This document shows positions 18,278 to 60,701 of a stretch of 64,000 bases of DNA, piece by piece. The first letter of the stretch is position 1. Every line of letters begins with the position of its first letter. Under the pieces are notes generated by a model that did no database searches, had not been told where the DNA came from, and saw nothing but the letters and a program-made list of their open reading frames with translations. The position numbers were made by a program, and so were the translations under genes. The stretch is taken from positions 366,230 to 430,229 of IMG/VR virus record IMGVR_UViG_3300044796_000657, one strand, 5' to 3'.

Positions 18278-18350
18278 GCCACCGTAGCTCAATTGGCAGA
18301 GCAAGTGTCTCTTAAACACGAGGTTGTGGGTTCGACTCCCGCCGATGGCA
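18278..18350 (+). tRNA. tRNA-Lys(CUU)
   Basis: gtgt-ct-ctt-aa-acac. Confidence 0.9.
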
Positions 18351-18370
18351 CTCAACACAAGAGGTTAACA

Positions 18371-19045
18371 ATGTGGGATTTAGAAACGATCAAAAGGATC
18401 AATAAAATCGCACTAGCAAAAGGTAGAAAATCTATGCTTCCTCAAGAAAACGTTTCGGTAGTTGACAAAATTTTGGCATCTACCGAAAAAGCAACCAAAG
18501 GTTATTCCAAGCAAGATAAGGCTTTGGTTTGCTTAATGGCTAAGAATGGATTCTTGAAAGCGTTTTTGGCAACTGCTTCGCTCAAAGAGAAAAGTCTTTG
18601 GCATAAGATTGTTTACAACCTTTTGATGAACGACGTTTATCCGTACATTGAAGAAATGGGCTTTGAAAGATTATACGCTGACACTATTCCCGATTTGATG
18701 AAAGATGATGTTCAAGACATCGCATTTTTGAGATTGCTCAAACTCATCAATGCACAACAAGCTCATCAAATGGTGCGGGATAGTTGGTATCTTGGCGACA
18801 GTCATCAGGCATTGTTCGCCTTGAAGTTAAACGACGATGCCGGTGATGATGAACTTTTGGAAATCATCAAAACCGTTATCGCAGGTAGCGGCAAAGTAGT
18901 CGCTGATTATTATGGTGGAAAAGCTGCTGCTGCTAATAGCTTGTTGGGTCAAACGATCAAGCGAGCAAAAGAAGCAGGCAAGAATACAGACCCGACAAAG
19001 ACCAAAGAGTTAATTGTTAAAACCTTAGATGAGACAAAACCATGA
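18371..19045 (+). CDS. GatB C-terminal/YqeY-like domain protein
   Basis: C-terminal VVADYYGGKAAAANSLLGQTIKRAKEAGKNTDP resembles the GatB tail; start moved past tRNA-Lys. Confidence 0.65.
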   Translation: MWDLETIKRINKIALAKGRKSMLPQENVSVVDKILASTEKATKGYSKQDKALVCLMAKNGFLKAFLATASLKEKSLWHKIVYNLLMNDVYPYIEEMGFERLYADTIPDLMKDDVQDIAFLRLLKLINAQQAHQMVRDSWYLGDSHQALFALKLNDDAGDDELLEIIKTVIAGSGKVVADYYGGKAAAANSLLGQTIKRAKEAGKNTDPTKTKELIVKTLDETKP

Positions 19046-19237: not shown

Positions 19238-19307
19238 AGGACGTATTGCGTGGGAGTAACATCGAACTCCAAATCCGAATGAGACGGTTCGAATCCGTCA
19301 CGTCCTA
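19238..19307 (+). tRNA. tRNA-Trp(CCA), shortened D-region
   Basis: aggacgt/acgtcct; loop ct-cca-aa; T-arm gacgg-ttcgaat-ccgtc. Confidence 0.7.
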
Positions 19308-19323
19308 CTTAGAAAAGAGGAAA

Positions 19324-24958: not shown

Positions 24959-25300
24959 ATGCATTACACGCTTTGTAAATATGGGAATGTGTCAGAGAGG
25001 TTGCTGGACACGACATATCCACTGACTTTAACCCCCGATGAAGTTGAGAATATGTTTGACTGCGGTGGCAACCCTCCCGTCCATTGTTACAGCGTCACTC
25101 ACATGCATGTGGTAGATCGTCTGAAAAAAGACCTTCCTGATTACAAATTTAATTTCAATCGGTGTTCGTATATGATTGAAGCGGGTGCCGATGTTTGGAA
25201 CGAGCAATACGAAGGTTTGTATCCTGCTCCCGATGAATTCACGCAAGGCATTCCAGATAGTTCGCCGTTAAATTCAGCGGTTGCTGTTATGCCCGGTTGA
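24959..25300 (+). CDS. hypothetical protein
   Basis: ORF with AAGG SD. Confidence 0.65.
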   Translation: MHYTLCKYGNVSERLLDTTYPLTLTPDEVENMFDCGGNPPVHCYSVTHMHVVDRLKKDLPDYKFNFNRCSYMIEAGADVWNEQYEGLYPAPDEFTQGIPDSSPLNSAVAVMPG

Positions 25301-25310
25301 TGGAAAATTT

Positions 25311-25382
25311 TGCCTTATAGCTCAACGGTAGAGCGGCGTGCTGTTAACACGAAGGTTGAAGGTTCAAATCCTTCTAGGGCAG
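25311..25382 (+). tRNA. tRNA-Asn(GUU)
   Basis: cgtg-ct-gtt-aa-cacg; G73. Confidence 0.9.
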
Positions 25383-25422
25383 CTTGGTTTGTATTTTTTG
25401 GAAACTCTGTCTAAAGGTCATC

Positions 25423-25731
25423 ATGAAAACGACGCAAAACTTCATCACGTGTAAGCTGGTTTTCGGCTTCGGGTTTAAGAAGGAAGATGTTGTGGCGTTG
25501 TTGGCCAAGTACACGCAAGATGGTGTCATTGCCAATTTCGTTGAAGACATCCATATCGGCTGCAATCGCTTGGCTTTTGCCGTCGTGGACATTCCTGCCT
25601 CTGTTAGCCACCAGTTGGTTAACGATAACGTAGTGAAGGAAATGGATATGCTTGCTTCATATGGCAAGCCTCTATCAATGGCCGAAAACTGCGGGGCTGG
25701 CGGATGCTGTGGTGGTGGTTGCGGACCTTAA
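25423..25731 (+). CDS. hypothetical protein with Cys/Gly-rich tail
   Basis: Ends CGAGGCCGGGCGP. Confidence 0.6.
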   Translation: MKTTQNFITCKLVFGFGFKKEDVVALLAKYTQDGVIANFVEDIHIGCNRLAFAVVDIPASVSHQLVNDNVVKEMDMLASYGKPLSMAENCGAGGCCGGGCGP

Positions 25732-26018
25732 TATTGATGGGGCTTAGATCGCCTTAATGTTGTGAAAGAGAAGACTTATGATAAATGTAGAGACAAATGC
25801 TGAGATTAGAGTAAGAGTAGAAAATGCTCTGCGTCGTCGCAATTTGTGGGACGTATTCAAGCAAGAAGGAATAATGGAAGAAGTGATTTCCGATATAACG
25901 AAAATACAAGGCGGTAGAAGTCCGTTATTGTGGTCGCAACTTGAAGATTTCTTGATAGGTTGGAGGGGCTAAAGTGGGCCTCGCCTAAGCCCCCATGTCG
26001 TATTCAGGGAAACGAATC

Positions 26019-26258
26019 ATGGCAACAGTAAAGTTCCAATTTGAAGCTGGCATGGTTGTGCGAAGTGATGTTCGCTCAATCATTAAAAAGTATTGCTTTC
26101 GGTGGAATTATGATTTGGCCATTGAAGAGGATGCCGGATTTTTTTCTACGACTTTTTATTGTAAGGTTAAGTGTCCAGACTCACAAAGCAAACTGGCCAA
26201 GGAACGAATCAATACATTGTTGATCGCATTGAAAAATCAACTTGACAACGGCAAATAG
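26019..26258 (+). CDS. small hypothetical protein
   Basis: ORF. Confidence 0.55.
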   Translation: MATVKFQFEAGMVVRSDVRSIIKKYCFRWNYDLAIEEDAGFFSTTFYCKVKCPDSQSKLAKERINTLLIALKNQLDNGK

Positions 26259-26579
26259 GTGTGTATAATGGGTGAAATGTCGCCATTCGCCTCTCGTGGA
26301 AGGGGCTTAGTTAGACAGGGTGTTAAACCTATTTATAACTATGTGAGTGGCCCGTTCGCAACTTACATACAAGCGGACACGTATCGGCGAAATTGTTGTC
26401 ATATGGGGTTTGAGATAGTGACGTTGGATGCGGTGACGGGCGGCGGATTTCGTCCCCCGAACTATCCATCCTACGGTTTCTATATTGTTCACCATCTGAA
26501 TAAACATCCACAAACGCCACCACCCGAACCAGTTGTTAAATCAACTTTCAAAACCTACTTTCGTGAGGCAAAAAAATGA
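26259..26579 (+). CDS. hypothetical protein
   Basis: Its stop overlaps the ATG at 26576 (ATGA). Confidence 0.55.
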   Translation: MCIMGEMSPFASRGRGLVRQGVKPIYNYVSGPFATYIQADTYRRNCCHMGFEIVTLDAVTGGGFRPPNYPSYGFYIVHHLNKHPQTPPPEPVVKSTFKTYFREAKK

Positions 26580-27305
26580 CTATGGTGTTACTTTGGCTCT
26601 AAGAACCTTTGCGGTTTGCGTCCTACGGGTCGCCTTCATATCGGTCACTACTTCTCGGTAATCTTGCCGGGTCGTGATGGGGCTGAAGTCCTCATAGCCA
26701 ATTATCACGCTCCGCAAGAAACCAACTTGGAGGAGCTTGTTAAAGTTCTCAACAAATTCGGTGTAAACCAAATCAGAATGCAGCGTGATGTATTCAATGC
26801 CGAACTTTACTTCCGCCTTCTCTCAATTGCCGGTTTTGGCGATTTAGCCAGAATGCCGCAATTCAAATCGGCTGATGAAGACAAACAAACTGGTCAACTA
26901 CTCACCTATCCAGTCTTGATGACACACGATGTCGTCGGCTATGAGAACGTGTTGGTAGGTGAAGATCAGAAGGTGCATTTGGAATACGCTCGTAGGCTAA
27001 TTCGCAAATACAACAAAACCTTTAATGAAGAAGTTGTTTTGCCTCGTCCGATGATTGTTGGCGGGAAAGTTAAGGACTTGCGGAAGCCGACTGAAAAGAT
27101 GAGCAAGTCGTCACCTGATGGTTGTTTGTTCCTTGACGATACGCCCGACGATATTCGTACAAAATTGAAGGCAGCAACCACGACACCGGAAGGGATAGAG
27201 AACCTTTCTACATTGTACACTCATTTTGTTGGGCCTACAGTGCCTTCTATGAATTCTGAGCTTAAGTCTCAGTTGGCAGATGCTTTGATTGAGGCTTTTA
27301 AATAA
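26576..27305 (+). CDS. trpS: tryptophanyl-tRNA synthetase, shortened; probable +1 frameshift at 26591-26597
   Basis: GLRPTGRLHIGHY (HIGH), LTYPVLMTHDV, VGEDQKVHLE, KMSKS; no in-frame ATG before the Rossmann strand. Confidence 0.85.
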
Positions 27306-27324
27306 TCTTGGCAAAGGAAACGCC

Positions 27325-27507
27325 ATGCAAACCGCACCGTTAGGTCATTGGATAGCATTTTTCCTTTCCATGATCACATTGATATTTTTATCAGTGGTTC
27401 CAGCAACCGATTTATCAGTTAATCAAAAACTGATTACTGCTGTTTATTTATTTCTATTTGGCCTTATTGGATTTCTAATTGGGCGAATTGGAACAAAAAA
27501 AGATTGA
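27325..27507 (+). CDS. small two-TM membrane protein
   Basis: Two hydrophobic helices. Confidence 0.55.
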   Translation: MQTAPLGHWIAFFLSMITLIFLSVVPATDLSVNQKLITAVYLFLFGLIGFLIGRIGTKKD

Positions 27508-27532
27508 CTTTCTGTAATGATGCGGGTATAGT
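27504..27532 (+). promoter_or_regulatory. sigma70-type promoter
   Basis: TTGACT-17 nt-TATAGT upstream of the GlyRS-like gene. Confidence 0.65.
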
Positions 27533-27584
27533 ATCTCTATGAAACCCGGCTAGACCAAGGCCGATACTTTATGAGGATTTTGCG

Positions 27585-28310
27585 ATGGAAGCGTTGTATG
27601 ACAAAAATGGCTTAATGTTTTATTCGGAGCGGGAAGTCAAGTTGCGGGAACAGTTCCGTGATTACTTTGCGGATCGAATGAGGGAAACGTTGTTAGCGAC
27701 GAATCCTATGTGGCGGTTTTTGATGGTGGAAGCACCTCTGTTAACGCCCAACAAACACATCAACAAGAATTACACTGCCGAAGATGTATTCGTGTGTGAC
27801 GATCTAACCTTAAGGCCGGAAACGACGCCGGGTACTTATCAGTGGATTCGTTCCAAGTTTGATGACAGCAACAGTGGTTTTCGTCCCCCGATTTGCGTTT
27901 GGCAATACGGCAAGAGTTTTCGGCAAGAACAGGATCAAGTATCAAAGCATTGCCGGTTCAAAGAGTTTTACCAGCAGGAATTCCAGTGCGTCTTTACGTC
28001 GGATACTGCGAATGATTATCACACGGTTTTACAAAAACCGGTTGAAAAGATGATTCGTGATATGATTGGCTTGCCGACTCGGTTGGTGGTTAGTGATCGG
28101 TTGCCGGATTACAGCAAGAGTACAATGGATATCGAAGTAGACAACGGCGACAAGTGGATGGAAGTTTGTAGTATGAGCCTGCGAACCGATTTTCCCGGTA
28201 CGGTCAGTTTCACGACCAAAACGAAGGTTGTGGAAAGGGATCTGTTGGTTGCGGAGGTTGCCATCGGTTTAGATCGGTGTGTTTACAATTTCCTGCAAAG
28301 GGTAGATTAA
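27585..28310 (+). CDS. class II aaRS catalytic core, GlyRS (alpha2-type)-like, lacking anticodon-binding domain
   Basis: LRPETTPG, GKSFRQE..RFKEFYQQEFQ (motif 2), WMEVCS, EVAIGLDRCV (motif 3); ends soon after motif 3. Confidence 0.8.
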   Translation: MEALYDKNGLMFYSEREVKLREQFRDYFADRMRETLLATNPMWRFLMVEAPLLTPNKHINKNYTAEDVFVCDDLTLRPETTPGTYQWIRSKFDDSNSGFRPPICVWQYGKSFRQEQDQVSKHCRFKEFYQQEFQCVFTSDTANDYHTVLQKPVEKMIRDMIGLPTRLVVSDRLPDYSKSTMDIEVDNGDKWMEVCSMSLRTDFPGTVSFTTKTKVVERDLLVAEVAIGLDRCVYNFLQRVD

Positions 28311-33644: not shown

Positions 33645-33718
33645 GGGCCTATAGTTCAACCGGGGAGAACATCCAACAGGAATGTTGGAAGGTCGAGGTT
33701 CAAATCCTCATAAGCCCA
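33645..33718 (+). ncRNA. tRNA-like RNA with GGAA-capped 7-bp arm instead of a 7-nt anticodon loop
   Basis: gggccta/taagccc, D-arm gttc/gaac, tccaaca-ggaa-tgttgga, T-arm. Confidence 0.7.
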
Positions 33719-33722
33719 CTTT

Positions 33723-47000: not shown

Positions 47001-49838
47001 ATGAATCTTGACCCTAACACTCGTGAACAAGAAGTTCTCAAATTGTGGAAGGGTCAAGATACGTTTCAGGCGATTCAATTTCGTCGGAAATCGGCTAAGC
47101 CTTTTGTGATGTTTGAAGGCCCGCCAACCGCCAATGGCAAACCCGGCATCCATCACGTTCTCACCCGCACATTTAAAGATGCAATCGCACGCTTCCAAAC
47201 CATGAAAGGCCGTTACGTTGAACGACGGGCCGGATGGGATGAACACGGATTGCCAGTAGAATTAGAAGTCCAAAAAGCCTACGGACTCCCCACCAAAGAA
47301 TCCATTCTCGATTACGGTGTTGCTGAATTTAATAACAACTGCCAAGTCAGCACCCGCAACTTCATCGCCGATTGGGAAAAATTAACCCACCGAATGGGTT
47401 ATTGGCTCGATTTTGAAAACGCCTATAACACATCAGATCCTAGTTATATCAACAAAGTTTGGACAGTCTTAGATAATCTCATGGCTAATGATGAGATTTA
47501 TCAAGACTATAAAATCGTGCCTTGGGCTTGCGATTCCCAAACCGTCTTATCCAATTCAGAATTAGAACAAGGTTATAAAGAGGTTGAACACAATACGATG
47601 ACGGTTAAATTCCGCATCGATGATGACACCAATACCTATCTGATCGCATGGACAACTACCCCTTGGACATTGCCAGCTAATATGGCTTTAGCAGTCAATC
47701 CTTCGTTAACATATTACGAAACCATTGACTCAGAGGGGTGCCATTGCATTAGCCTCAAAAAAACCGAACCCTCATTACCAATCAGTGGCCACAAACTTGT
47801 CGGCCTAAAATATCGTCACCCATTTATCTCTGGTAAGGTCTGTCAAGTCTATGGCGACAACTTCGTTAGAGGCGATACAGGAACCGGAATTGTACATATC
47901 GCACCTGCTTTTGGCATTGATGATTACGCTCTTTGGAAAAAGAGTATGGCCCTTGAGCCAATCATCTGTCACGTAAATCCGGATGGTTCTTTCAACGCAG
48001 CAGCTCCAGACTTGCTGCGAGGCATCAATTTGTTGGACAGAAATTTCAAAACTGTTAACTCTTTAATTCATGCCCACTTGACTTCGGCAGGAGCAAACTA
48101 CGAAAATCAATCCTTCAAGGATTCGGGATTTACACATCAATACCCGCACAATTGGCGAACGGGTAAGCCTCTTATCTATATGTTTAGACATAGTTGGTTC
48201 GTGAAAACAACCGGCCTCAAACTTCGTCAAGTTAACAAAGAAGAAGTGACTTGGTATCCTAGTAATATCAAAGAAGGTAGATTTGGACAATGGCTTGATG
48301 GTGGCAAAGATTGGGCAATTTCCCGTGAACGATTTTGGGGTACACCGTTGCCCTTTTATCGTGATGCTGACAATAACGTCTCTTTCCAAGTCCCTCAATA
48401 TTATCACAAGCCGGGTTCTGATACGCCCATCGTCAAAGATAGAGTAATCTGGAAACGAACCTCAGAAGTTTTGGACTGCTGGTTCGATAGTGGCGCAATG
48501 CCGTTTGCCGCTTATGAGAAGTTCCAGCCAGCCGATGTAATTTGTGAGGGCATCGATCAAACCCGTGGGTGGTTCTATTCGTTAATGGTTATTGGTGTTG
48601 CTCTCACAGAACATACGCCATTCAAGGCAGCGATTTGCCTCGGCCATGTTCTGGATAAGAACGGCGTGAAAATGAGCAAGTCCAAAAAGAATGCTGTTGA
48701 TCCTTGGGAAGTTTTTGAGCGAGAAGGCGCTGATGCCGTTCGTTGGTACATGCTCAAAACACCAATCGGACAATCTCTTTTGTGGAATGAAGCCGAAGTT
48801 AAAAAAGTCAATCAAACATTCTTCAATCGCTTGCTTAGCTCTCTTGACTTTTACGAGCAACAACAAAACCCCGACAAGCCTCATCGATCTAGTAATGGGT
48901 CAAAAGATGCTACGGATATTTGGATGATGGCACGCCTACACAGTGTTGTTAACAGCGTATCCCAATATTTGGAAGATTATGAATTTGCCAAAGCGATTGA
49001 AGCCATTGAGCTTTTTACCAACGATCTTTCTAATGTTTGGATTAGAACAAATCGATCACGATTCCTTGCTGATGGTGCCCATGTTCCTAACGGTATTTTG
49101 AAAAACTGCCTAAAAACACTAACATTGTTAATTGCACCGTTGGCGCCGATGTTGGCTGAACATGTCTGGTATCGTTTGTGTCCAGAAAACATTGTTTATG
49201 GAAGCATGGGTTCGGTACATGCTACCGATTGGCCTAAACCAGAAGATAATACGTGGGACGCATTCTCAAAAAATATTGTTATTCTTGAAGCCATGAAAGA
49301 AGCTCGTCAAGTTATCACTGAAGGCTTGAAACAGAGAGACAAGCGGAATATCCGTTTGAGGCAACCGATCAAAGCAGTGCGGGTGCCTCGTAACATCAAT
49401 CCACAACTCATTCAATTCGTCAAGACGGAGTTGAATGTTAAAGACATCATCGTTGATGCTAAGGGGGAATCCGTGGAAATGGATTTCAACCTTACGGATG
49501 AACTTGTAGCGGAAGGTATGGCAAGAGATTTGATGCGGGCTATTCAAGTTCGCCGCAAAGATTTAGGTTTGAAGCGTGGTGAACCAATTCGTATCGTATT
49601 GGAAGTCGATAAAAAGACCAGATCCATGCTTGAACCACATATGAGTGAGTTGATGTTAAGTGTGACTTGTGGTGATCTGCGATACAAAGAAGTCGCAGAT
49701 ACAGCATCGCCGATTGTAATGGAAGTCACAAAAATGGAACCGGCTAACCCAGATGGCTATAAGGAATTCGGAAAAGCCACAACAAAACTGACTTCTGCTG
49801 AAATCGCCAAAGTGATATTGACAAATCGTGTCGGTTAA
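47001..49838 (+). CDS. ileS: isoleucyl-tRNA synthetase (type 2-like)
   Basis: FEGPPTANGKPGIHH, GWDEHGLP, WTTTPWTL, GTGIVH, DWAISRERFWG, EGIDQTRGWF, KMSKS. Confidence 0.93.
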   Translation: MNLDPNTREQEVLKLWKGQDTFQAIQFRRKSAKPFVMFEGPPTANGKPGIHHVLTRTFKDAIARFQTMKGRYVERRAGWDEHGLPVELEVQKAYGLPTKESILDYGVAEFNNNCQVSTRNFIADWEKLTHRMGYWLDFENAYNTSDPSYINKVWTVLDNLMANDEIYQDYKIVPWACDSQTVLSNSELEQGYKEVEHNTMTVKFRIDDDTNTYLIAWTTTPWTLPANMALAVNPSLTYYETIDSEGCHCISLKKTEPSLPISGHKLVGLKYRHPFISGKVCQVYGDNFVRGDTGTGIVHIAPAFGIDDYALWKKSMALEPIICHVNPDGSFNAAAPDLLRGINLLDRNFKTVNSLIHAHLTSAGANYENQSFKDSGFTHQYPHNWRTGKPLIYMFRHSWFVKTTGLKLRQVNKEEVTWYPSNIKEGRFGQWLDGGKDWAISRERFWGTPLPFYRDADNNVSFQVPQYYHKPGSDTPIVKDRVIWKRTSEVLDCWFDSGAMPFAAYEKFQPADVICEGIDQTRGWFYSLMVIGVALTEHTPFKAAICLGHVLDKNGVKMSKSKKNAVDPWEVFEREGADAVRWYMLKTPIGQSLLWNEAEVKKVNQTFFNRLLSSLDFYEQQQNPDKPHRSSNGSKDATDIWMMARLHSVVNSVSQYLEDYEFAKAIEAIELFTNDLSNVWIRTNRSRFLADGAHVPNGILKNCLKTLTLLIAPLAPMLAEHVWYRLCPENIVYGSMGSVHATDWPKPEDNTWDAFSKNIVILEAMKEARQVITEGLKQRDKRNIRLRQPIKAVRVPRNINPQLIQFVKTELNVKDIIVDAKGESVEMDFNLTDELVAEGMARDLMRAIQVRRKDLGLKRGEPIRIVLEVDKKTRSMLEPHMSELMLSVTCGDLRYKEVADTASPIVMEVTKMEPANPDGYKEFGKATTKLTSAEIAKVILTNRVG

Positions 49839-49876
49839 GTTAGACTATCTGACCGATACAAATAAAGGGCGATTTT

Positions 49877-51313
49877 ATGAAAAAGGCAGAATTAGTAGAA
49901 GCAGGCATTCCCGTGAATTGCCATGCTGCTGCCATTAAGGTCATTCAAGATGGCTTCCGGCACAAAATCTTCCCTTCCAACAAAGGGGCACGGGAAGCTT
50001 TAACGAGAGTGGCCGCTGCGCCTGAAATGCACCTCGGCGCAGACGACTTCTACCGAGAATTGGCAAGCACCATCATTGCCACCCGCAAACAGCACGTTGA
50101 AGACGAAGCTCTTTACGCCAAAAACAGCATTGGTACAAGCCAATCGTTTGCCTCTTGGGGTGCCGACATTGAACAAGGTGCCATTGATCAAATGCAAAAT
50201 GCGGTATCCCTGCCAGTTTCAGTGGTCGGCGCCATGATGCCCGATGCCCACAGTGGGTACGGTTTGCCCGTAGGCGGTGTTCTGGCCACATACGACAGCA
50301 TCGTTCCTTATGCGGTAGGCGTCGATATTGGTTGCCGGATGCGTTTTACGTTCACCGATATCGATCCATCACTCCTCAAGGATTCTCACGACAAGAAGGC
50401 GACTCCGCTCTGTAAAGCCTTGCGTGAAGGAACGGTTTTTGGCGTCGGCGGTCAACACGAAATTAAGATGAACCATCCAGTCATGGACAAGGATTGGAAC
50501 ATCACGGCTGTCACAAAAGCCGCCAAAGATAAGGCATGGCGGCAGTTGGGAACCAGCGGTTCCGGCAATCACTTCGCCGAATGGGGCATTGTGACGTTAA
50601 CTCAAAAAGAATTCGGTTTAGAGCCGGGGAAATACGTCGCTCTCATGACTCACAGCGGCTCCCGTGGTTCGGGTTCTGATGTTTGTAGTTACTATACCGA
50701 CGTTGCCGCTTCCAAGCTGCCAAAGGCTTATGAGAAATTCGGCAAAATGAAATTGGCGTGGTTGCCAATGGCTTCCGAAGCTGGCCAAGAGTATTGGGCA
50801 GCTATGAACCTTATGGGTGATTATGCCGCTGCCAATCACTACGTCATTCACGAATTGGTTCTCAAGAATATGGGAGCAACGGCCCTTAAAGTGATTGAGA
50901 ACCACCACAATTTCGCATGGAAAGAAGATTACAAGGGAACCGAAGTGTACGTTCACCGTAAAGGTGCTACACCTGCCGGAAAGGGCGTACTGGGTATTAT
51001 CCCCGGTAGTATGGCCACTTCCGCATTCGTCGTACGAGGCAAGGGCAATCCTGAAAGCTTGATGTCGGCTTCTCACGGTGCCGGGCGGGCAATGAGCCGC
51101 ACCAAAGCTAAGGAACAGTTTAACTGGAGCACATGGAAGAGCCAAATCCAAAATGCCGGTGTACGACTATTGAGCGGCGGGATTGATGAGGTTCCCGGTG
51201 CTTACAAAGACATTCACAAAGTCATGGCTCAACAAACCGACTTGATTGATGTTGTGGCAGAATTCATGCCCAAAATCGTCCTCATGGGTCAAGATGGTCG
51301 GAGCGAAGATTAA
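49877..51313 (+). CDS. rtcB: RtcB RNA ligase
   Basis: PDAHSGYGLPVGG, GVDIGC, GSGNHF, HSGSRG, HHNFA, HRKGAT, PGSM, SASHGAGR, DEVPGAYK. Confidence 0.95.
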   Translation: MKKAELVEAGIPVNCHAAAIKVIQDGFRHKIFPSNKGAREALTRVAAAPEMHLGADDFYRELASTIIATRKQHVEDEALYAKNSIGTSQSFASWGADIEQGAIDQMQNAVSLPVSVVGAMMPDAHSGYGLPVGGVLATYDSIVPYAVGVDIGCRMRFTFTDIDPSLLKDSHDKKATPLCKALREGTVFGVGGQHEIKMNHPVMDKDWNITAVTKAAKDKAWRQLGTSGSGNHFAEWGIVTLTQKEFGLEPGKYVALMTHSGSRGSGSDVCSYYTDVAASKLPKAYEKFGKMKLAWLPMASEAGQEYWAAMNLMGDYAAANHYVIHELVLKNMGATALKVIENHHNFAWKEDYKGTEVYVHRKGATPAGKGVLGIIPGSMATSAFVVRGKGNPESLMSASHGAGRAMSRTKAKEQFNWSTWKSQIQNAGVRLLSGGIDEVPGAYKDIHKVMAQQTDLIDVVAEFMPKIVLMGQDGRSED

Positions 51314-51975: not shown

Positions 51976-52740
51976 ATGAAAGTTGCGAAATGGTTTACGA
52001 AACATTATACACTCGCACAAACCTTTGACACGGGCATTCAGTATGCTTTTTTGTCAGCGGATAACGAACAGTGTTTCCCATTGGTGACTTGTAAGGAATT
52101 TTTGATTGACGCCGTTCATGCGTTAATTCATAACAAGCCTACGTTCCTCTATGGGTTTACGTACAGTATAGCCAACAACCCGCCGATCTGTCTTGACCCT
52201 TGTCGTCTACTTCTTTCTACCAATAGCAAAAAAAACAAAGCCACATTTTACGAAGATGCGGTTCGACTGAAATCCTTTTTAAATCTCCTTGAACAAAAAA
52301 TGGGATGCGAAAACGAGTCAGAAATTGAAGTGGTAGAAAATCATCCCCCTCTACCTTACATCAAACAGCCTATGGTTTTGTTAACCAGTCCGGCCTTGTG
52401 GATGCTTTCACCGCCAATGCTTTCGTTATTCGCCCTACTCATTCGGGTGGGGTTCTACTACAACGGCAAAGAAACAGCATGGGGTCACTGTCAAAAAGTC
52501 CGTGACAAAAAGATCATCACCGATCATCCACGAAACGGCGAGTATCTTAAGTCGGCTTGGAAAACCATAATGGATTTGGTGGAATCGGGCGGTATGTGCC
52601 GGTTCAAACCAGATATGAAAGATAATTGGCCACTATTCGCTCAACAATGGCAGTTGCACGAATGGTCAGGAATTGTATCGCTGGCCAAGGGAACAACGAA
52701 AAATCTCTGTCCACAATGGTATCCCAAATCTACATCTTGA
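51976..52740 (+). CDS. hypothetical protein, paralog of 7074-7898
   Basis: QCFPLVTCKEFLIDAV...YGFTY; SPPMLSLFALLIRVG vs SPVMVSMYSLMLRVG. Confidence 0.75.
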   Translation: MKVAKWFTKHYTLAQTFDTGIQYAFLSADNEQCFPLVTCKEFLIDAVHALIHNKPTFLYGFTYSIANNPPICLDPCRLLLSTNSKKNKATFYEDAVRLKSFLNLLEQKMGCENESEIEVVENHPPLPYIKQPMVLLTSPALWMLSPPMLSLFALLIRVGFYYNGKETAWGHCQKVRDKKIITDHPRNGEYLKSAWKTIMDLVESGGMCRFKPDMKDNWPLFAQQWQLHEWSGIVSLAKGTTKNLCPQWYPKSTS

Positions 52741-56631: not shown

Positions 56632-56854
56632 ATTTTTATGCATAGGTGGCCCACTAGATAAGGTGCGAGCAACCAGCGAAGAATTAGCAATACGGATGCC
56701 AGAATATAACTCAGTGTATACTTCTTATAACTGTAGTTATCGCATTCGTCGTCCCAATAAAAAAATGATCGAGAATGCCAAAGAATCTGGCAGACCGGTG
56801 TTAACTTCCGCAATTATGGTTCACAATAGTGTGTTCCAAGTAAAGCCCATGTGA
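56621..56854 (+). CDS. hypothetical protein
   Basis: FLCIGGPLD; stop inside tRNA-Leu. Confidence 0.55.
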   Translation: MATKFLCIGGPLDKVRATSEELAIRMPEYNSVYTSYNCSYRIRRPNKKMIENAKESGRPVLTSAIMVHNSVFQVKPM

Positions 56855-56928
56855 TGGAACTGGCAGACTTCACGGTTCGAGAAGCCGTGGCTCTTTTGAG
56901 CGTGCAGGTTCGAAGCCTGTCATGGGCA
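56845..56928 (+). tRNA. tRNA-Leu(GAG), C33
   Basis: acggt-tc-gag-aa-gccgt; variable arm gctc-tttt-gagc; A73. Confidence 0.82.
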
Positions 56929-56957
56929 CTGTTTTCCCCTTTTATCGGAGTATGATT

Positions 56958-59842: not shown

Positions 59843-60098
59843 TCGTGTTTTTGCCAAAGCCAACATGCGACGAATTCTTGCCAGAAGAAGAACCTAAGCC
59901 CAAACCCAAATTTGATTGGCGAAAGGTTCAAGAAGAAAAATTTAACACCAAAAAAGTTCCGCCTGAAATGTATCTCTCACAAGACGATCAGGGGGAATTT
60001 TCTTTTTGGCGATAAATTTTTCCATAATTTCTCTTGCTATTTGAAACAGGATGTGATACACTCATTTGGCGTTCACAACTTTCTTTCAAGGGGAAATC

Positions 60099-60701
60099 AT
60101 GTTCGACAAATTCGGAAAATTGGTGGTGTTGGGATGCGGCGGGTTAATTGCGAGCGTTGTAGTCGTCGGCATCATCTTTGGCATCTGGTATTTCGGCACA
60201 TTCAACAAGCAAGCAAGATTCGTCGCTCAAATTTCGGGCGAACAAGACGTATGCAAGATCAGCTACGACAACACATGGAAGGTCATTCAAGAAATGGCCC
60301 AAGTTCCCGATGCCTACAAAGACGGCTTCAAGGAATCATGGGGTGTGATTGTTAACAGCAGTCCTAGCAAAACCGCTGGCCTCGTAAACGCCTACGTCAC
60401 TCGCTTCAACCCCAAATTTGACAGCAAGTTGTATGAAAAGCTTATGGTCACCATCGAGCATCAGCGGAAATCATTCGCAGAAGCCCAAAAGAAGCTGCGG
60501 GCACTGAAAACCGAACACGACGCTTTCCGAACAACCATGCCCGTTGACAGCATGTTGGGCCGAATGCTCTTCGGCACTTTCCCGCCAATCGAAGTCCAAC
60601 TCGTTCTCTCGGAAAAGACCGACAACGCCTTCGAGACCGGTCGAGACGACAAGATCAACGTCTTTGACCGCAAACCCGCCACCGTTCCTACCGCCAGTTG
60701 A
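60099..60701 (+). CDS. membrane-anchored coiled-coil protein (LemA-like possible)
   Basis: N-terminal TM helix then helical domain; GC-richer. Confidence 0.6.
   Translation: MFDKFGKLVVLGCGGLIASVVVVGIIFGIWYFGTFNKQARFVAQISGEQDVCKISYDNTWKVIQEMAQVPDAYKDGFKESWGVIVNSSPSKTAGLVNAYVTRFNPKFDSKLYEKLMVTIEHQRKSFAEAQKKLRALKTEHDAFRTTMPVDSMLGRMLFGTFPPIEVQLVLSEKTDNAFETGRDDKINVFDRKPATVPTAS

What the first reader, a model, noticed from the sequence alone, without database searches (positions are those of the whole stretch)
26571..27305. Phage trpS appears to be expressed through a prfB-like, Trp-starvation-sensing +1 frameshift
Seen: the only ATG coupled to the upstream gene (ATGA overlap at 26576) reads ATG ACT ATG GTG TTA CTT TGG CTC TAA (MTMVLLWL*). 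The TrpRS frame (GSKNLCGLRPTGRLHIGHY) is the +1 frame, with a stop at 26577 and no ATG before the Rossmann strand. The junction is CUU-UGG-C, with an SD-like GGUG ending 3 nt before CUU. The TrpRS-frame product contains no Trp codon. Known: prfB shifts +1 at CUU-UGA-C, where tRNA-Leu slips CUU to UUU helped by an internal SD 3 nt upstream. Inference: here the A-site codon is Trp, so the shift should be favoured when Trp-tRNA is scarce or cleaved, giving an autoregulatory hungry-codon switch for a phage synthetase. I do not know of a described equivalent.
Basis: partly seen in the sequence, partly recalled or inferred. Interest (0 to 1): 0.92.

Follow-up and report, generated by a model that had tools for sequence, protein, structure and literature searches.

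The report
Frameshift-gated tryptophan-tRNA synthetase in huge phages
A compact tryptophanyl-tRNA synthetase gene of a huge phage, and of at least 35 relatives from independent metagenomes, can only be made if the ribosome slips forward one base at a conserved CUU-UGG-C site whose waiting codon is tryptophan, which looks like a built-in sensor that switches the enzyme on when charged tRNA-Trp runs short.

Summary
ATG 26576 opens a 9-codon frame (MTMVLLWL*). The TrpRS frame is +1 to it, is closed by TGA 26577, and has no start codon before strand beta1 of the Rossmann fold.

Comparative data make this a conserved signal. In 35 distinct relatives (52-83% aa identity), from IMG/VR, JGI, ENA, Logan and GenBank assemblies, the SD-preceded ATG is also in the -1 frame. 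It is followed 1-10 codons later by (GGUG or GGAGG)-N3-CUU-UGG-C and an early 0-frame stop.

- **Nucleotide-level selection:** the synonymous sites inside the motif are frozen.
- **Conventional initiation:** eighteen loci have no canonical in-frame start before the HIGH motif.
- **Controls:** more distant relatives, and one nested secondary loss, use an ordinary in-frame ATG and lack the motif.
- **The product:** it folds as a compact TrpRS (pLDDT 88; every top PDB match is TrpRS) and contains no Trp.
- **Other signals:** no downstream RNA structure, T-box or intron was found.

Best reading: an obligatory prfB-type +1 frameshift whose A-site codon is the cognate sense codon UGG, as in the Ty1 hungry-codon site. 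That it responds to Trp-tRNA shortage is inferred, not shown. I found no published equivalent. A 2016 review says of starvation-specific hungry-codon products that "no examples are known".

The parts
26242..26269 (+). Consensus sigma-70-type promoter (TTGACA-16-TATAAT, 12/12). It would give a ~300-nt leader ahead of trpS
   Evidence: The leader is not unusually structured (z = -0.74) and matches no Rfam family. It lies in a stretch absent from relative L162.
26565..26568 (+). Initiation Shine-Dalgarno GAGG, 7 nt before ATG 26576
   Evidence: All relatives have GGAG, AAGGA or GAGG 5-10 nt before their -1-frame ATG.
26576..26602 (+). 0-frame leader ORF ATG ACT ATG GTG TTA CTT TGG CTC TAA (MTMVLLWL*). 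Starts are possible at 26576 or 26582
   Evidence: Equivalent short 0-frame ORFs (MVCLWL*, MVRLWLETVRI*, MTTVYLWL* and others) occur in the 31 relatives tabulated; L169-L172 show the same.
26577..26579 (+). TGA stop in the TrpRS frame, directly upstream of the open TrpRS frame
   Evidence: Eleven relatives have a stop in the same place, and none has an in-frame ATG with an SD.
26584..26587 (+). Internal SD-like GGTG (complementary to CACC of the 16S 3' end), ending 3 nt before the P-site codon
   Evidence: GGTG in 27 of 31 and GGAGG in 4 of 31 relatives, always ending exactly 3 nt before CTT.
26588..26590 (+). Spacer or E-site codon TTA (weak A:U pairs at positions 2 and 3)
   Evidence: Relatives have TGT 10, CGT 10, TAT 7. 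TAT is the prfB spacer. Weak E-site pairing favours +1 frameshifting.
26591..26597 (+). Shift heptamer CTT TGG C. Peptidyl-tRNA-Leu re-pairs from CUU to UUU while UGG waits in the A site, and GGC is the first +1-frame codon
   Evidence: Invariant CTTTGG in 35 of 35 relatives, with a following C in all but L006. The synonymous sites are frozen.
26595..27305 (+). TrpRS-like coding sequence in the +1 frame (GSKNLCGLRPTG...EAFK, 236 aa, plus TAA). The predicted trans-frame product is MTMVLL+GSKNLCG..., 242 aa
   Evidence: Pfam PF00579 1e-29. TrpRS are the best PDB and NCBIfam hits. AF2 pLDDT 88, and the top 50 Foldseek hits are all TrpRS.
26604..26618 (+). First beta-strand of the Rossmann fold (NLCGL). 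The rival start TTG 26616 is its last codon
   Evidence: DSSP strand at residues 9-13 of the model.
26637..26648 (+). HIGH signature (H-I-G-H)
   Evidence: Conserved in the alignment.
27096..27110 (+). KMSKS signature
   Evidence: K173 to S177 invariant.
19238..19308 (+). Phage tRNA-Trp(CCA).
56845..56929 (+). Phage tRNA-Leu(GAG). It acts in trans and has the same anticodon as the tRNA that slips CUU to UUU in prfB
   Evidence: The role of tRNA-Leu(GAG) in prfB is described.

Best explanation
The gene encodes a compact (~240 aa) tryptophanyl-tRNA synthetase. Making it requires a programmed +1 ribosomal frameshift a few codons after initiation.

**Sequence of events**
1. Ribosomes start at the SD-preceded ATG (26576 or 26582) and translate M(T M)V L L.
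2. CUU (26591-93) then sits in the P site and UGG (26594-96) in the A site.
3. An SD-like GGUG exactly 3 nt upstream pairs with the 16S 3' end. The E-site codon UUA pairs weakly.
4. If Trp-tRNA-Trp arrives promptly, the ribosome reads W-L and terminates at UAA 26600. The product is an 8-residue peptide and no enzyme.
5. If the A site stays empty, peptidyl-tRNA-Leu(GAG) re-pairs from CUU to UUU. GGC is then read and the ribosome continues in the TrpRS frame, giving MTMVLL-GSKNLCGLRPTG...

Because the enzyme makes the very aminoacyl-tRNA that competes with the shift, this forms a negative-feedback loop that holds charged tRNA-Trp steady during infection.

**Shown and inferred**
- Shown by sequence comparison: the frame arrangement, the conserved motif, the lack of alternative starts, and the TrpRS fold.
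- Inferred: the slip mechanism, its efficiency and its response to Trp-tRNA.
For: 1. **Recurrence.** The frame arrangement recurs in 35 distinct relatives at 52-83% aa identity, from many independent assemblies.
2. **Motif.** It is invariant. CTT-TGG is found in 35 of 35, the following C in all but L006, and GGTG or GGAGG ends exactly 3 nt before CTT in 31 of 31 scored.
3. **Nucleotide-level selection.** At the site, Phe is TTT in 31 of 31 (49% elsewhere in the same genes). Gly is GGC in 30 of 31 (30% elsewhere). The preceding third position is C in 31 of 31 (22% elsewhere).
4. **No alternative start.** Eighteen loci have no ATG, GTG or TTG in the TrpRS frame before the HIGH motif, and many have a stop directly upstream.
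5. **Structure.** The AF2 model puts strand beta1 at NLCGL, upstream of and including TTG 26616. The residues encoded 5' of the shift site in the TrpRS frame have pLDDT below 50.
6. **Controls.** L164, L165, L008, L036, L041 and LR756501/2 have ordinary in-frame ATGs and no motif. L164 is nested in a well-supported clade of frameshift members, which indicates a secondary loss.
7. **Match to prfB.** The elements match the defined prfB site: SD-like element, 3-nt spacer (UAU in 7 relatives), CUU, U-starting A-site codon, 4th C, tRNA-Leu(GAG). The heptamer differs from Ty1 CUU_AGG_C by one base and has the same +1 codon, GGC.
8. **Trp content.** 120 family members contain 2 Trp in 26,816 residues, against 1.76% in the window's ORFs. 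Every Trp-containing member found is a non-frameshift one.
9. **UGG retention.** UGG is never replaced by UGA or by another U-starting codon, although non-frameshift relatives show that the encoded Gly is dispensable.
10. **In trans.** The phage carries tRNA-Trp(CCA) and tRNA-Leu(GAG).
11. **Kinetics.** +1 frameshifting competes with A-site tRNA selection and rises with starvation.
Against: - No experiment has been done. Frameshift efficiency, the trans-frame peptide and Trp dependence are all untested.
- GGUG is a weak 4-bp SD.
- The site lies only 3-5 codons from the start codon, whereas in prfB it is at codon 25-26. The initiation context could therefore matter in unknown ways.
- With a sense A-site codon and normal Trp-tRNA levels, efficiency may be low. 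From memory, prfB constructs with UGA changed to UGG shift at only a few percent.
- The protein is about 90 residues shorter than bacterial TrpRS, with a truncated C-terminal domain. It scores below the NCBIfam trpS cutoff (95 against 176.75), so real tRNA-Trp charging is not proven.
- Low Trp content is partly a property of the whole family, since several non-frameshift members also have none.
- A single evolutionary origin means that the match between the A-site codon and the enzyme's amino acid is, statistically, one event.
Confidence: 0.72

Rival explanations
1. The +1 frameshift is real and obligatory, but it works as a constitutive throttle. It sets a fixed low yield of TrpRS, and UGG is there for reasons other than sensing charged tRNA-Trp.
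For: All the evidence for the frameshift itself applies. Nothing computational measures its responsiveness. The match between the A-site codon and the enzyme's amino acid stems from one evolutionary origin. Only about 16 U-starting codons allow the CUU to UUU re-pairing, so the prior chance of a match is about 1 in 16.
Against: UGG is kept in 35 of 35 diverged lineages, although UGA (one transition away), other stops or rare codons would also support shifting. The encoded Gly is not needed, since non-frameshift relatives read MNKRLCG or MKTLCG. The frameshift clade has no Trp downstream of the site. A-site competition makes any such site respond to its aminoacyl-tRNA on kinetic grounds.
Confidence: 0.17
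2. There is no recoding. TrpRS is initiated conventionally at TTG 26616, or by re-initiation after the short leader ORF ends at TAA 26600. The leader acts as a small regulatory uORF.
For: TTG 26616 is the first canonical start in the frame and lies 13 nt after the leader's stop. Gene callers used such starts in 21 of 120 family members.
Against: The codon at that position is TTC, TTT, CTT, CTG or TTA in most relatives. Eighteen loci have no canonical start before HIGH. The 0-frame stop lies 1 to 12 codons after TGG, so its position is not conserved. Starting at 26616 removes strand beta1. This reading does not explain the frozen synonymous sites or the SD-like element at fixed 3-nt spacing. 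TTG 26616 has no SD of its own.
Confidence: 0.04
3. It is an artefact or a dead gene: a 1-nt assembly or sequencing indel, or a pseudogene.
For: A single-base frame break near a 5' end is the commonest signature of an error.
Against: The same break, at the same motif, occurs in 35 distinct sequences from different projects, assemblers and ecosystems. The downstream ORF is intact and conserved, with HIGH and KMSKS and a confident TrpRS fold. There is no homopolymer at the site.
Confidence: 0.02
4. TGA 26577 is read through or recoded, fusing upstream ORF 26259-26579 (same frame) to TrpRS.
For: The two ORFs share a frame and are separated only by the TGA.
Against: The upstream ORF is not conserved. 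It lies in a stretch absent from L162, its start lies inside a consensus promoter, and it has no family hit. In relatives the upstream in-frame stops are TGA, TAA or TAG at varying distances, with unrelated sequence or even tRNA genes ahead of them. This reading does not explain the -1-frame ATG with its SD, or the motif.
Confidence: 0.02

Closest known systems
prfB (release factor 2) autoregulatory +1 frameshift, AGGGGG-UAU-CUU-UGA-C
   Same: The P-site CUU is read by tRNA-Leu(GAG) and re-pairs to UUU. An SD-like element sits 3 nt upstream. The spacer or E-site codon pairs weakly (UAU itself in 7 relatives). A C follows the A-site codon. No 3' RNA structure is present. The site lies early in the gene. 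The logic is the same: the gene product is the factor that decodes the A-site codon and so suppresses its own synthesis.
   Different: The A-site codon is the sense codon UGG, not the stop UGA. The competitor is therefore an aminoacyl-tRNA made by the enzyme rather than the protein itself, which adds one step of indirection. The gene is an aaRS in a phage. The SD-like element is usually the weaker GGUG. The site is 3-5 codons from the start rather than about 25. The failed path ends at a stop 1-12 codons further on.
Yeast Ty1 / ABP140 +1 frameshift, CUU_AGG_C (hungry-codon paradigm)
   Same: The heptamer differs by one base (CUU-UGG-C against CUU-AGG-C). The A-site codon is a sense codon whose slow decoding drives the shift. 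Peptidyl-tRNA-Leu slips on CUU. The +1 codon is the same, GGC (Gly).
   Different: Ty1 relies on a constitutively rare tRNA-Arg(CCU) and sets a fixed Gag:Gag-Pol ratio. It has no SD stimulator, is eukaryotic, and has no link between the hungry codon and the product's function.
Experimental hungry-codon frameshifting in E. coli (Gallant, Weiss, Curran and Yarus; starvation-induced shifts at sense codons)
   Same: The same physical principle applies: limiting one aminoacyl-tRNA raises +1 shifting at its codon when the P-site tRNA can re-pair.
   Different: Those are laboratory constructs or translation errors. The 2016 review says of natural starvation-specific trans-frame products that 'no examples are known'.
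Amino-acid-sensing control of bacterial aaRS and trp genes: T-box riboswitches, trpL and pheST leader-peptide attenuation
   Same: They sense shortage of a specific charged tRNA and raise expression of the matching synthetase or pathway. trpL also uses Trp codons in a short leader peptide.
   Different: No T-box or other Rfam element is present. There are no conserved alternative hairpins or terminator. The leader has a single Trp codon. The output is a change of reading frame, not transcription antitermination.
Bacterial TrpRS (class Ic aminoacyl-tRNA synthetase)
   Same: It has HIGH and KMSKS signatures and a Rossmann fold with TMq about 0.8 to many TrpRS crystal structures. The GEDQ and LMxxD blocks typical of TrpRS are present.
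   Different: It is about 236 aa rather than about 330, with shorter CP1 and C-terminal anticodon-binding regions. Identity is 25-30%, and it scores below the trpS equivalog cutoff. It contains no Trp.

Membership tests
prfB-type programmed +1 frameshift | P-site CUU that can re-pair with the overlapping UUU | tested here: met
   CTT T at 26591-94. Found in 35 of 35 relatives.
prfB-type programmed +1 frameshift | SD-like element about 3 nt 5' of CUU | tested here: met
   GGTG 26584-87. GGTG in 27 of 31 and GGAGG in 4 of 31 relatives, always ending 3 nt before CTT. Pairing with the 16S rRNA is inferred.
prfB-type programmed +1 frameshift | In-frame UGA stop in the A site ('shifty stop') | tested here: not met
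   The A-site codon is UGG (Trp) in every member.
prfB-type programmed +1 frameshift | C immediately 3' of the A-site codon | tested here: met
   C in 30 of 31 scored relatives and T in L006.
prfB-type programmed +1 frameshift | The gene encodes RF2, which autoregulates by decoding the A-site codon | tested here: not met
   The gene encodes a TrpRS-like enzyme. An analogous feedback loop is inferred only.
Hungry-codon +1 frameshift (Ty1 type, CUU_AGG_C) | A heptamer CUU-NGG-C with a sense A-site codon and +1 codon GGC | tested here: met
   CUU-UGG-C. The Ty1 site is as quoted.
Hungry-codon +1 frameshift (Ty1 type, CUU_AGG_C) | The A-site codon is decoded slowly because its aminoacyl-tRNA is limiting | not testable with these tools
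   This needs tRNA-Trp charging levels and reporter assays.
Programmed ribosomal frameshift (any) | A trans-frame protein is demonstrated | not testable with these tools
   This needs MS or N-terminal sequencing. It is supported indirectly by the absence of alternative starts and by beta1 lying 5' of any start.
Tryptophanyl-tRNA synthetase | Class I HIGH and KMSKS signatures and a TrpRS-type Rossmann fold | tested here: met
   HIGH 26637-48 and KMSKS 27096-110. The top 50 Foldseek hits are all TrpRS, with TMq 0.76-0.84.
Tryptophanyl-tRNA synthetase | Full-length architecture with an anticodon-binding domain; score above the trpS equivalog threshold | tested here: not met
   236 aa against about 330. 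TMt is only about 0.6. TIGR00233 scores 95.1 against a cutoff of 176.75.
Tryptophanyl-tRNA synthetase | Charges tRNA-Trp with tryptophan | not testable with these tools
   This needs an aminoacylation assay.
T-box / leader-peptide attenuation | A conserved leader RNA structure (specifier and antiterminator, or alternative hairpins) | tested here: not met
   No Rfam hit in 25300-27700. The alifold consensus energy is -0.57 with single-sequence z-scores near 0. The leader z-score is -0.74.

The most novel reading that the evidence does not exclude
This may be the first natural example of an amino-acid-specific hungry-codon switch. A viral aminoacyl-tRNA synthetase would be translated only when its own product, charged tRNA-Trp, is scarce, through an SD-stimulated +1 frameshift at CUU-UGG-C. 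The device is conserved across a widespread clade of huge phages. It could act as a homeostat for the phage's private translation system. It could also be a counter-measure that fires when the host depletes or damages tRNA-Trp or inactivates its own TrpRS; the same genome island carries 33 tRNAs and an RtcB tRNA ligase.
Probability: 0.6. Interest if true: 0.92.

Novelty: new variant of a known kind. Interest (0 to 1): 0.88.

Why it matters
If true, this would matter in five ways.

1. It would fill a gap that the recoding field has stated openly. Starvation-induced hungry-codon frameshifting has been a laboratory phenomenon for decades, yet for natural, functional starvation-specific trans-frame products 'no examples are known' (Atkins et al. 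2016).
2. It would add a fourth principle of aaRS regulation, beside T-boxes, leader-peptide attenuation and tRNA-mimic operators. This one needs only about 16 nt of mRNA.
3. It would show that huge phages regulate their imported translation genes in response to the state of the tRNA pool, rather than merely carrying them.
4. It has a practical consequence for annotation. At least 68 of the 120 closest database gene calls for this family are cut into or past the HIGH motif.
5. The compact cassette could serve as a genetically encoded reporter or switch for Trp-tRNA charging.

Tried and rejected
- **Motif scan of IMG/VR.** An exact scan with GGTGNNTCTTTGGCTC returned 119+ mostly unrelated hits. 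Fourteen specified bases are too unspecific, so it was not used.
- **Nucleotide search against GenBank phages.** It found only the neighbouring class II aaRS-like gene. The protein search found only distant relatives at no more than 35% identity, with ordinary starts.
- **Stimulatory RNA structure 3' of the site.** None is conserved.
- **T-box, intron or other RNA family in 25300-27700.** None beyond tRNA-Asn.
- **Structured 300-nt leader.** It is not significant.
- **Transcriptional slippage.** The A7 run at 26570-76 is upstream of the ATG and is not conserved. There is no homopolymer at the shift site.
- **The odd tRNA with an 8-nt anticodon loop (33645-33719).** I considered it as a quadruplet decoder for the site. 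Its anticodon GGAA would read UUCC, not CUUU, UUUG or UGGC, so it was rejected.
- **Window-wide scan for further sites of the same design.** Only trpS qualifies.
- **CTT TGA C at 52023.** It lies inside ORF 51976-52740, out of context and without an SD, so it is taken as chance.
- **CTTTGGC at 60176, between overlapping ORFs 59912-60355 and 60066-60701.** It looked like a second candidate. However, ATG 60099 with an SD starts the second ORF in frame (MFDKFGKLVV...), so no shift is needed.
- **DNA for P0053 (WWVFGSE variant).** It could not be fetched.
Full report
**1. The observation**

- ATG 26576 overlaps the TGA (26577-79) that closes ORF 26259-26579. It reads ATG ACT ATG GTG TTA CTT TGG CTC TAA, that is MTMVLLWL*.
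- The frame with homology to class I W/Y synthetases (Pfam PF00579, 1e-29) is +1 to that ATG and is open from 26580 to TAA 27303-05.
- Its first canonical start is TTG 26616, and its first ATG lies 198 nt in.
- GGTG (26584-87) ends 3 nt before CTT. The 14-nt pattern GGTGNNNCTTTGGC is unique in the window, against 0.01 expected.
- Two details were added. There is a second 0-frame ATG at 26582, and the upstream ORF shares the TrpRS frame, so TGA readthrough had to be tested as a rival.

**2. The genomic setting**

The window comes from a huge phage. It is identical to part of IMG/VR contig 3300044796_000657, 430 kb, and the same protein is recorded on a contig of 614 kb. The region is a translation island containing:
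- 33 tRNA genes, including tRNA-Trp(CCA) and tRNA-Leu(GAG);
- a truncated class II aaRS core directly downstream of trpS;
- a 945-aa class I synthetase, an RtcB tRNA ligase, and a GatB/YqeY-domain protein.

**3. The decisive evidence is comparative**

A protein search found a large family of short (200-285 aa) TrpRS-like proteins, mostly on large metagenomic contigs. I fetched DNA for relatives from IMG/VR, JGI/ENA/GenBank metagenomes, a GTDB genome and Logan assemblies.

In 35 distinct relatives at 52-83% amino-acid identity the arrangement is the same:
- An ATG preceded by a good Shine-Dalgarno lies in the -1 frame relative to TrpRS.
- It is followed after 1-4 codons (10 in one case) by G-GTG or GG-AGG, then one codon, then CTT TGG C.
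- The ATG frame stops 1-12 codons later.

Of the 31 scored, the 5 nt ending 3 nt before CTT are NGGTG in 27 and GGAGG in 4. L024 reads GGAGG TAT CTT TGG C, which is the E. coli prfB site (AGGGGG UAU CUU UGA C) with one base changed in the A-site codon.

**4. The signal is selected at the nucleotide level**

In the TrpRS frame the site is read as xxC TTT GGC.
- Phe is TTT in 31 of 31, although TTT is only 49% of Phe codons in the rest of these genes.
- Gly is GGC in 30 of 31, against 30% elsewhere.
- The preceding third position is C in 31 of 31, against 22% elsewhere.

These sequences are related, so the naive probabilities (1e-10 to 1e-21) overstate the case. The contrast with the freely varying synonymous sites of the neighbouring HIGH motif is nonetheless plain.

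**5. Conventional initiation cannot explain the family**

- Eighteen loci have no ATG, GTG or TTG in the TrpRS frame between the upstream stop and the HIGH motif. In L022 the first one lies 177 nt beyond the RPTG anchor.
- Eleven loci have a stop directly 5' of the conserved stretch.
- The AlphaFold model of the window's protein (pLDDT 88, pTM 0.81) puts the first Rossmann strand at NLCGL, 26604-26618. A start at TTG 26616 would therefore delete it.
- The four residues encoded 5' of the shift site in the TrpRS frame have pLDDT below 50.
- The position of the 0-frame stop varies from 1 to 12 codons after TGG, which argues against termination-reinitiation.
- Gene callers failed accordingly. 68 of the 120 closest database entries begin inside or after HIGH, 21 begin at a Leu codon just before RPTG, and the window's own call starts at LPGRDG.

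**6. Controls**

- More distant relatives have an ordinary SD-ATG in frame (MKYISGIRPTG and the like) and no motif. These are L008, L036, L041 and the 642-735 kb phages LR756501/2 at 34% identity.
- Two closer ones, L164 (P0005, MNKRLCGLRPTG) and L165 (P0006), also have in-frame ATGs.
- In a maximum-likelihood tree L164 is nested in a well-supported clade (100/98) with the window, L162, L163 and L009, all of which frameshift. The device was therefore lost there secondarily, and the residues between the shift site and LCG are dispensable for the enzyme.

**7. Other rivals**

- **Error or pseudogene:** excluded by recurrence across projects and by the intact, conserved, well-folding ORF.
- **TGA readthrough:** unlikely. 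The upstream ORF is not conserved and lies in about 815 nt absent from L162. Its start lies inside a 12/12 consensus promoter. In relatives the upstream sequence is unrelated, with TAA, TAG or TGA at varying distances and sometimes a tRNA gene.
- **RNA elements:** there is no conserved RNA structure 3' of the site, no Rfam family, and no significant fold in the leader.
- **The odd tRNA:** the tRNA with an 8-nt anticodon loop cannot read the site.

**8. What the product is**

All 50 best Foldseek matches in the PDB are bacterial or mitochondrial TrpRS (TMq 0.76-0.84, 23-30% identity). TrpRS also lead the sequence searches. HIGH and KMSKS are intact.

The protein is about 90 residues shorter than cellular TrpRS (TMt about 0.6) and scores below the NCBIfam trpS cutoff. 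It is therefore a minimal, divergent TrpRS whose charging activity remains to be shown.

**9. Mechanism**

*Inferred from established knowledge.* With CUU in the P site, tRNA-Leu(GAG) can re-pair with UUU. An SD:anti-SD helix ending 3 nt upstream and a weakly pairing E-site codon favour the forward slip. The slip competes with decoding of the A-site codon.

Here that codon is UGG, so the competitor is Trp-tRNA-Trp, which is the product of the enzyme encoded downstream.
- Plentiful Trp-tRNA gives the peptide MTMVLLWL and termination.
- Scarce Trp-tRNA gives the shift and MTMVLL-GSKNLCG..., the enzyme.

*Observations in favour of Trp-specific sensing over a fixed throttle:*
- UGG is never replaced in 35 lineages, although UGA is one transition away and would make the classical shifty stop.
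- Non-frameshift relatives show that the encoded Gly is not needed.
- The family has 2 Trp in 26,816 residues, against 1.76% in the window's ORFs. All four Trp-containing sequences found (P0005/L164, P0117, L036, L041) are non-frameshift ones.

The enzyme can therefore be completed when Trp-tRNA is limiting. These points are suggestive, not proof. Several non-frameshift relatives also lack Trp, and the device has a single origin.

**10. Comparison with what is known**

The site works like prfB in CUU, SD, spacer, 4th C and feedback logic, and like Ty1 in its sense hungry codon and +1 codon GGC. It is a member of neither family: the A-site codon is not a stop, the gene is not RF2, and the system is not eukaryotic.

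Full-text searches found no paper describing a frameshift in trpS or any phage aaRS, and none describing CUU UGG as a natural site. The comprehensive 2016 review says that for starvation-specific hungry-codon trans-frame products 'no examples are known'. The library is limited to open-access papers and bioRxiv, so an unseen report cannot be excluded.

**11. Verdict**

- The frameshift requirement and its prfB-like anatomy are strongly supported by comparative sequence evidence (about 0.9).
- Trp-tRNA-responsive autoregulation is the best-supported function but is inferred (about 0.6-0.7).
- It is a new variant of programmed +1 frameshifting, with a new regulatory logic and wide distribution in a clade of huge phages.

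Noticed in passing
window 33645-33719 (+): ARAGORN reports a tRNA of undetermined identity with a 4-base anticodon (GGAA) and an enlarged anticodon loop, lacking the usual U33. It sits directly upstream of three tRNA-Thr genes. It could be a quadruplet (UUCC) decoder or a degenerate tRNA-Phe. It does not match the trpS shift site.
   Followed up: partly
window 27585-28310 (+): A 241-aa truncated class II aaRS catalytic core (PF00587; weak GlyRS/HisRS-like NCBIfam hits) lies immediately downstream of trpS behind its own promoter-like site (27504-27532). It is conserved as a neighbour in L009 and resembles genes in Sinorhizobium phage Phosso and Xanthomonas phage XbC2. It has an ordinary ATG start.
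   Followed up: partly
window 25731-26545: An ~815-nt stretch with three small ORFs (25778-25972, 25995-26258, and the start of 26259-26579) and a perfect TTGACA-16-TATAAT promoter (26242-26269) is absent from the closest relative, L162. There trpS directly follows the homologue of 25384-25731. This may be an insertion that brought a new promoter for trpS.
   Followed up: partly
window 47001-51313 and 18293-19045: The window is a translation and tRNA-repair island. It holds a 945-aa class I (Ile/Val/Leu-type) synthetase, an RtcB tRNA ligase and a GatB/YqeY-domain protein among 33 tRNA genes. RtcB suggests that the phage expects tRNA cleavage by its host.
   Followed up: no
L040:~1490-1530 compared with L020: L040, from a sample of the same series as L020, has a 9-nt deletion (GGTGCGTCT). 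This removes the ATG's G, the SD-like element and the spacer, leaving CTA TTT TGG CTC TAA with no start codon. It is a natural variant that should be unable to express the enzyme, or an assembly variant.
   Followed up: no
whole window, both strands: The heptamer CTTTGGC occurs 31 times, against 9.85 +/- 2.85 expected from dinucleotide shuffles. Most copies lie out of frame or antisense inside genes (Phe-Gly or Ala-Lys codon pairs), so this looks compositional. The excess itself is unexplained.
   Followed up: partly
L003, L025, L168 and P0017 (5' of trpS): In several relatives a tRNA gene ends only 15-40 nt before the trpS leader ATG. Translations such as GSIPT, WVRVP and RFDSS are T-arm read-throughs. 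trpS may therefore be co-transcribed with tRNAs and released by tRNA processing.
   Followed up: no
protein database entries P0001-P0120: 68 of the 120 closest gene calls for this family start inside or after the HIGH motif, and 12 read across the shift site from fortuitous upstream ATGs. The family is systematically mis-annotated in public collections.
   Followed up: yes
window 52023-52029 (+): An exact prfB-type heptamer, CTT TGA C, lies out of frame inside ORF 51976-52740 (which has no Pfam hit). It has no SD-like element upstream and is probably chance.
   Followed up: partly
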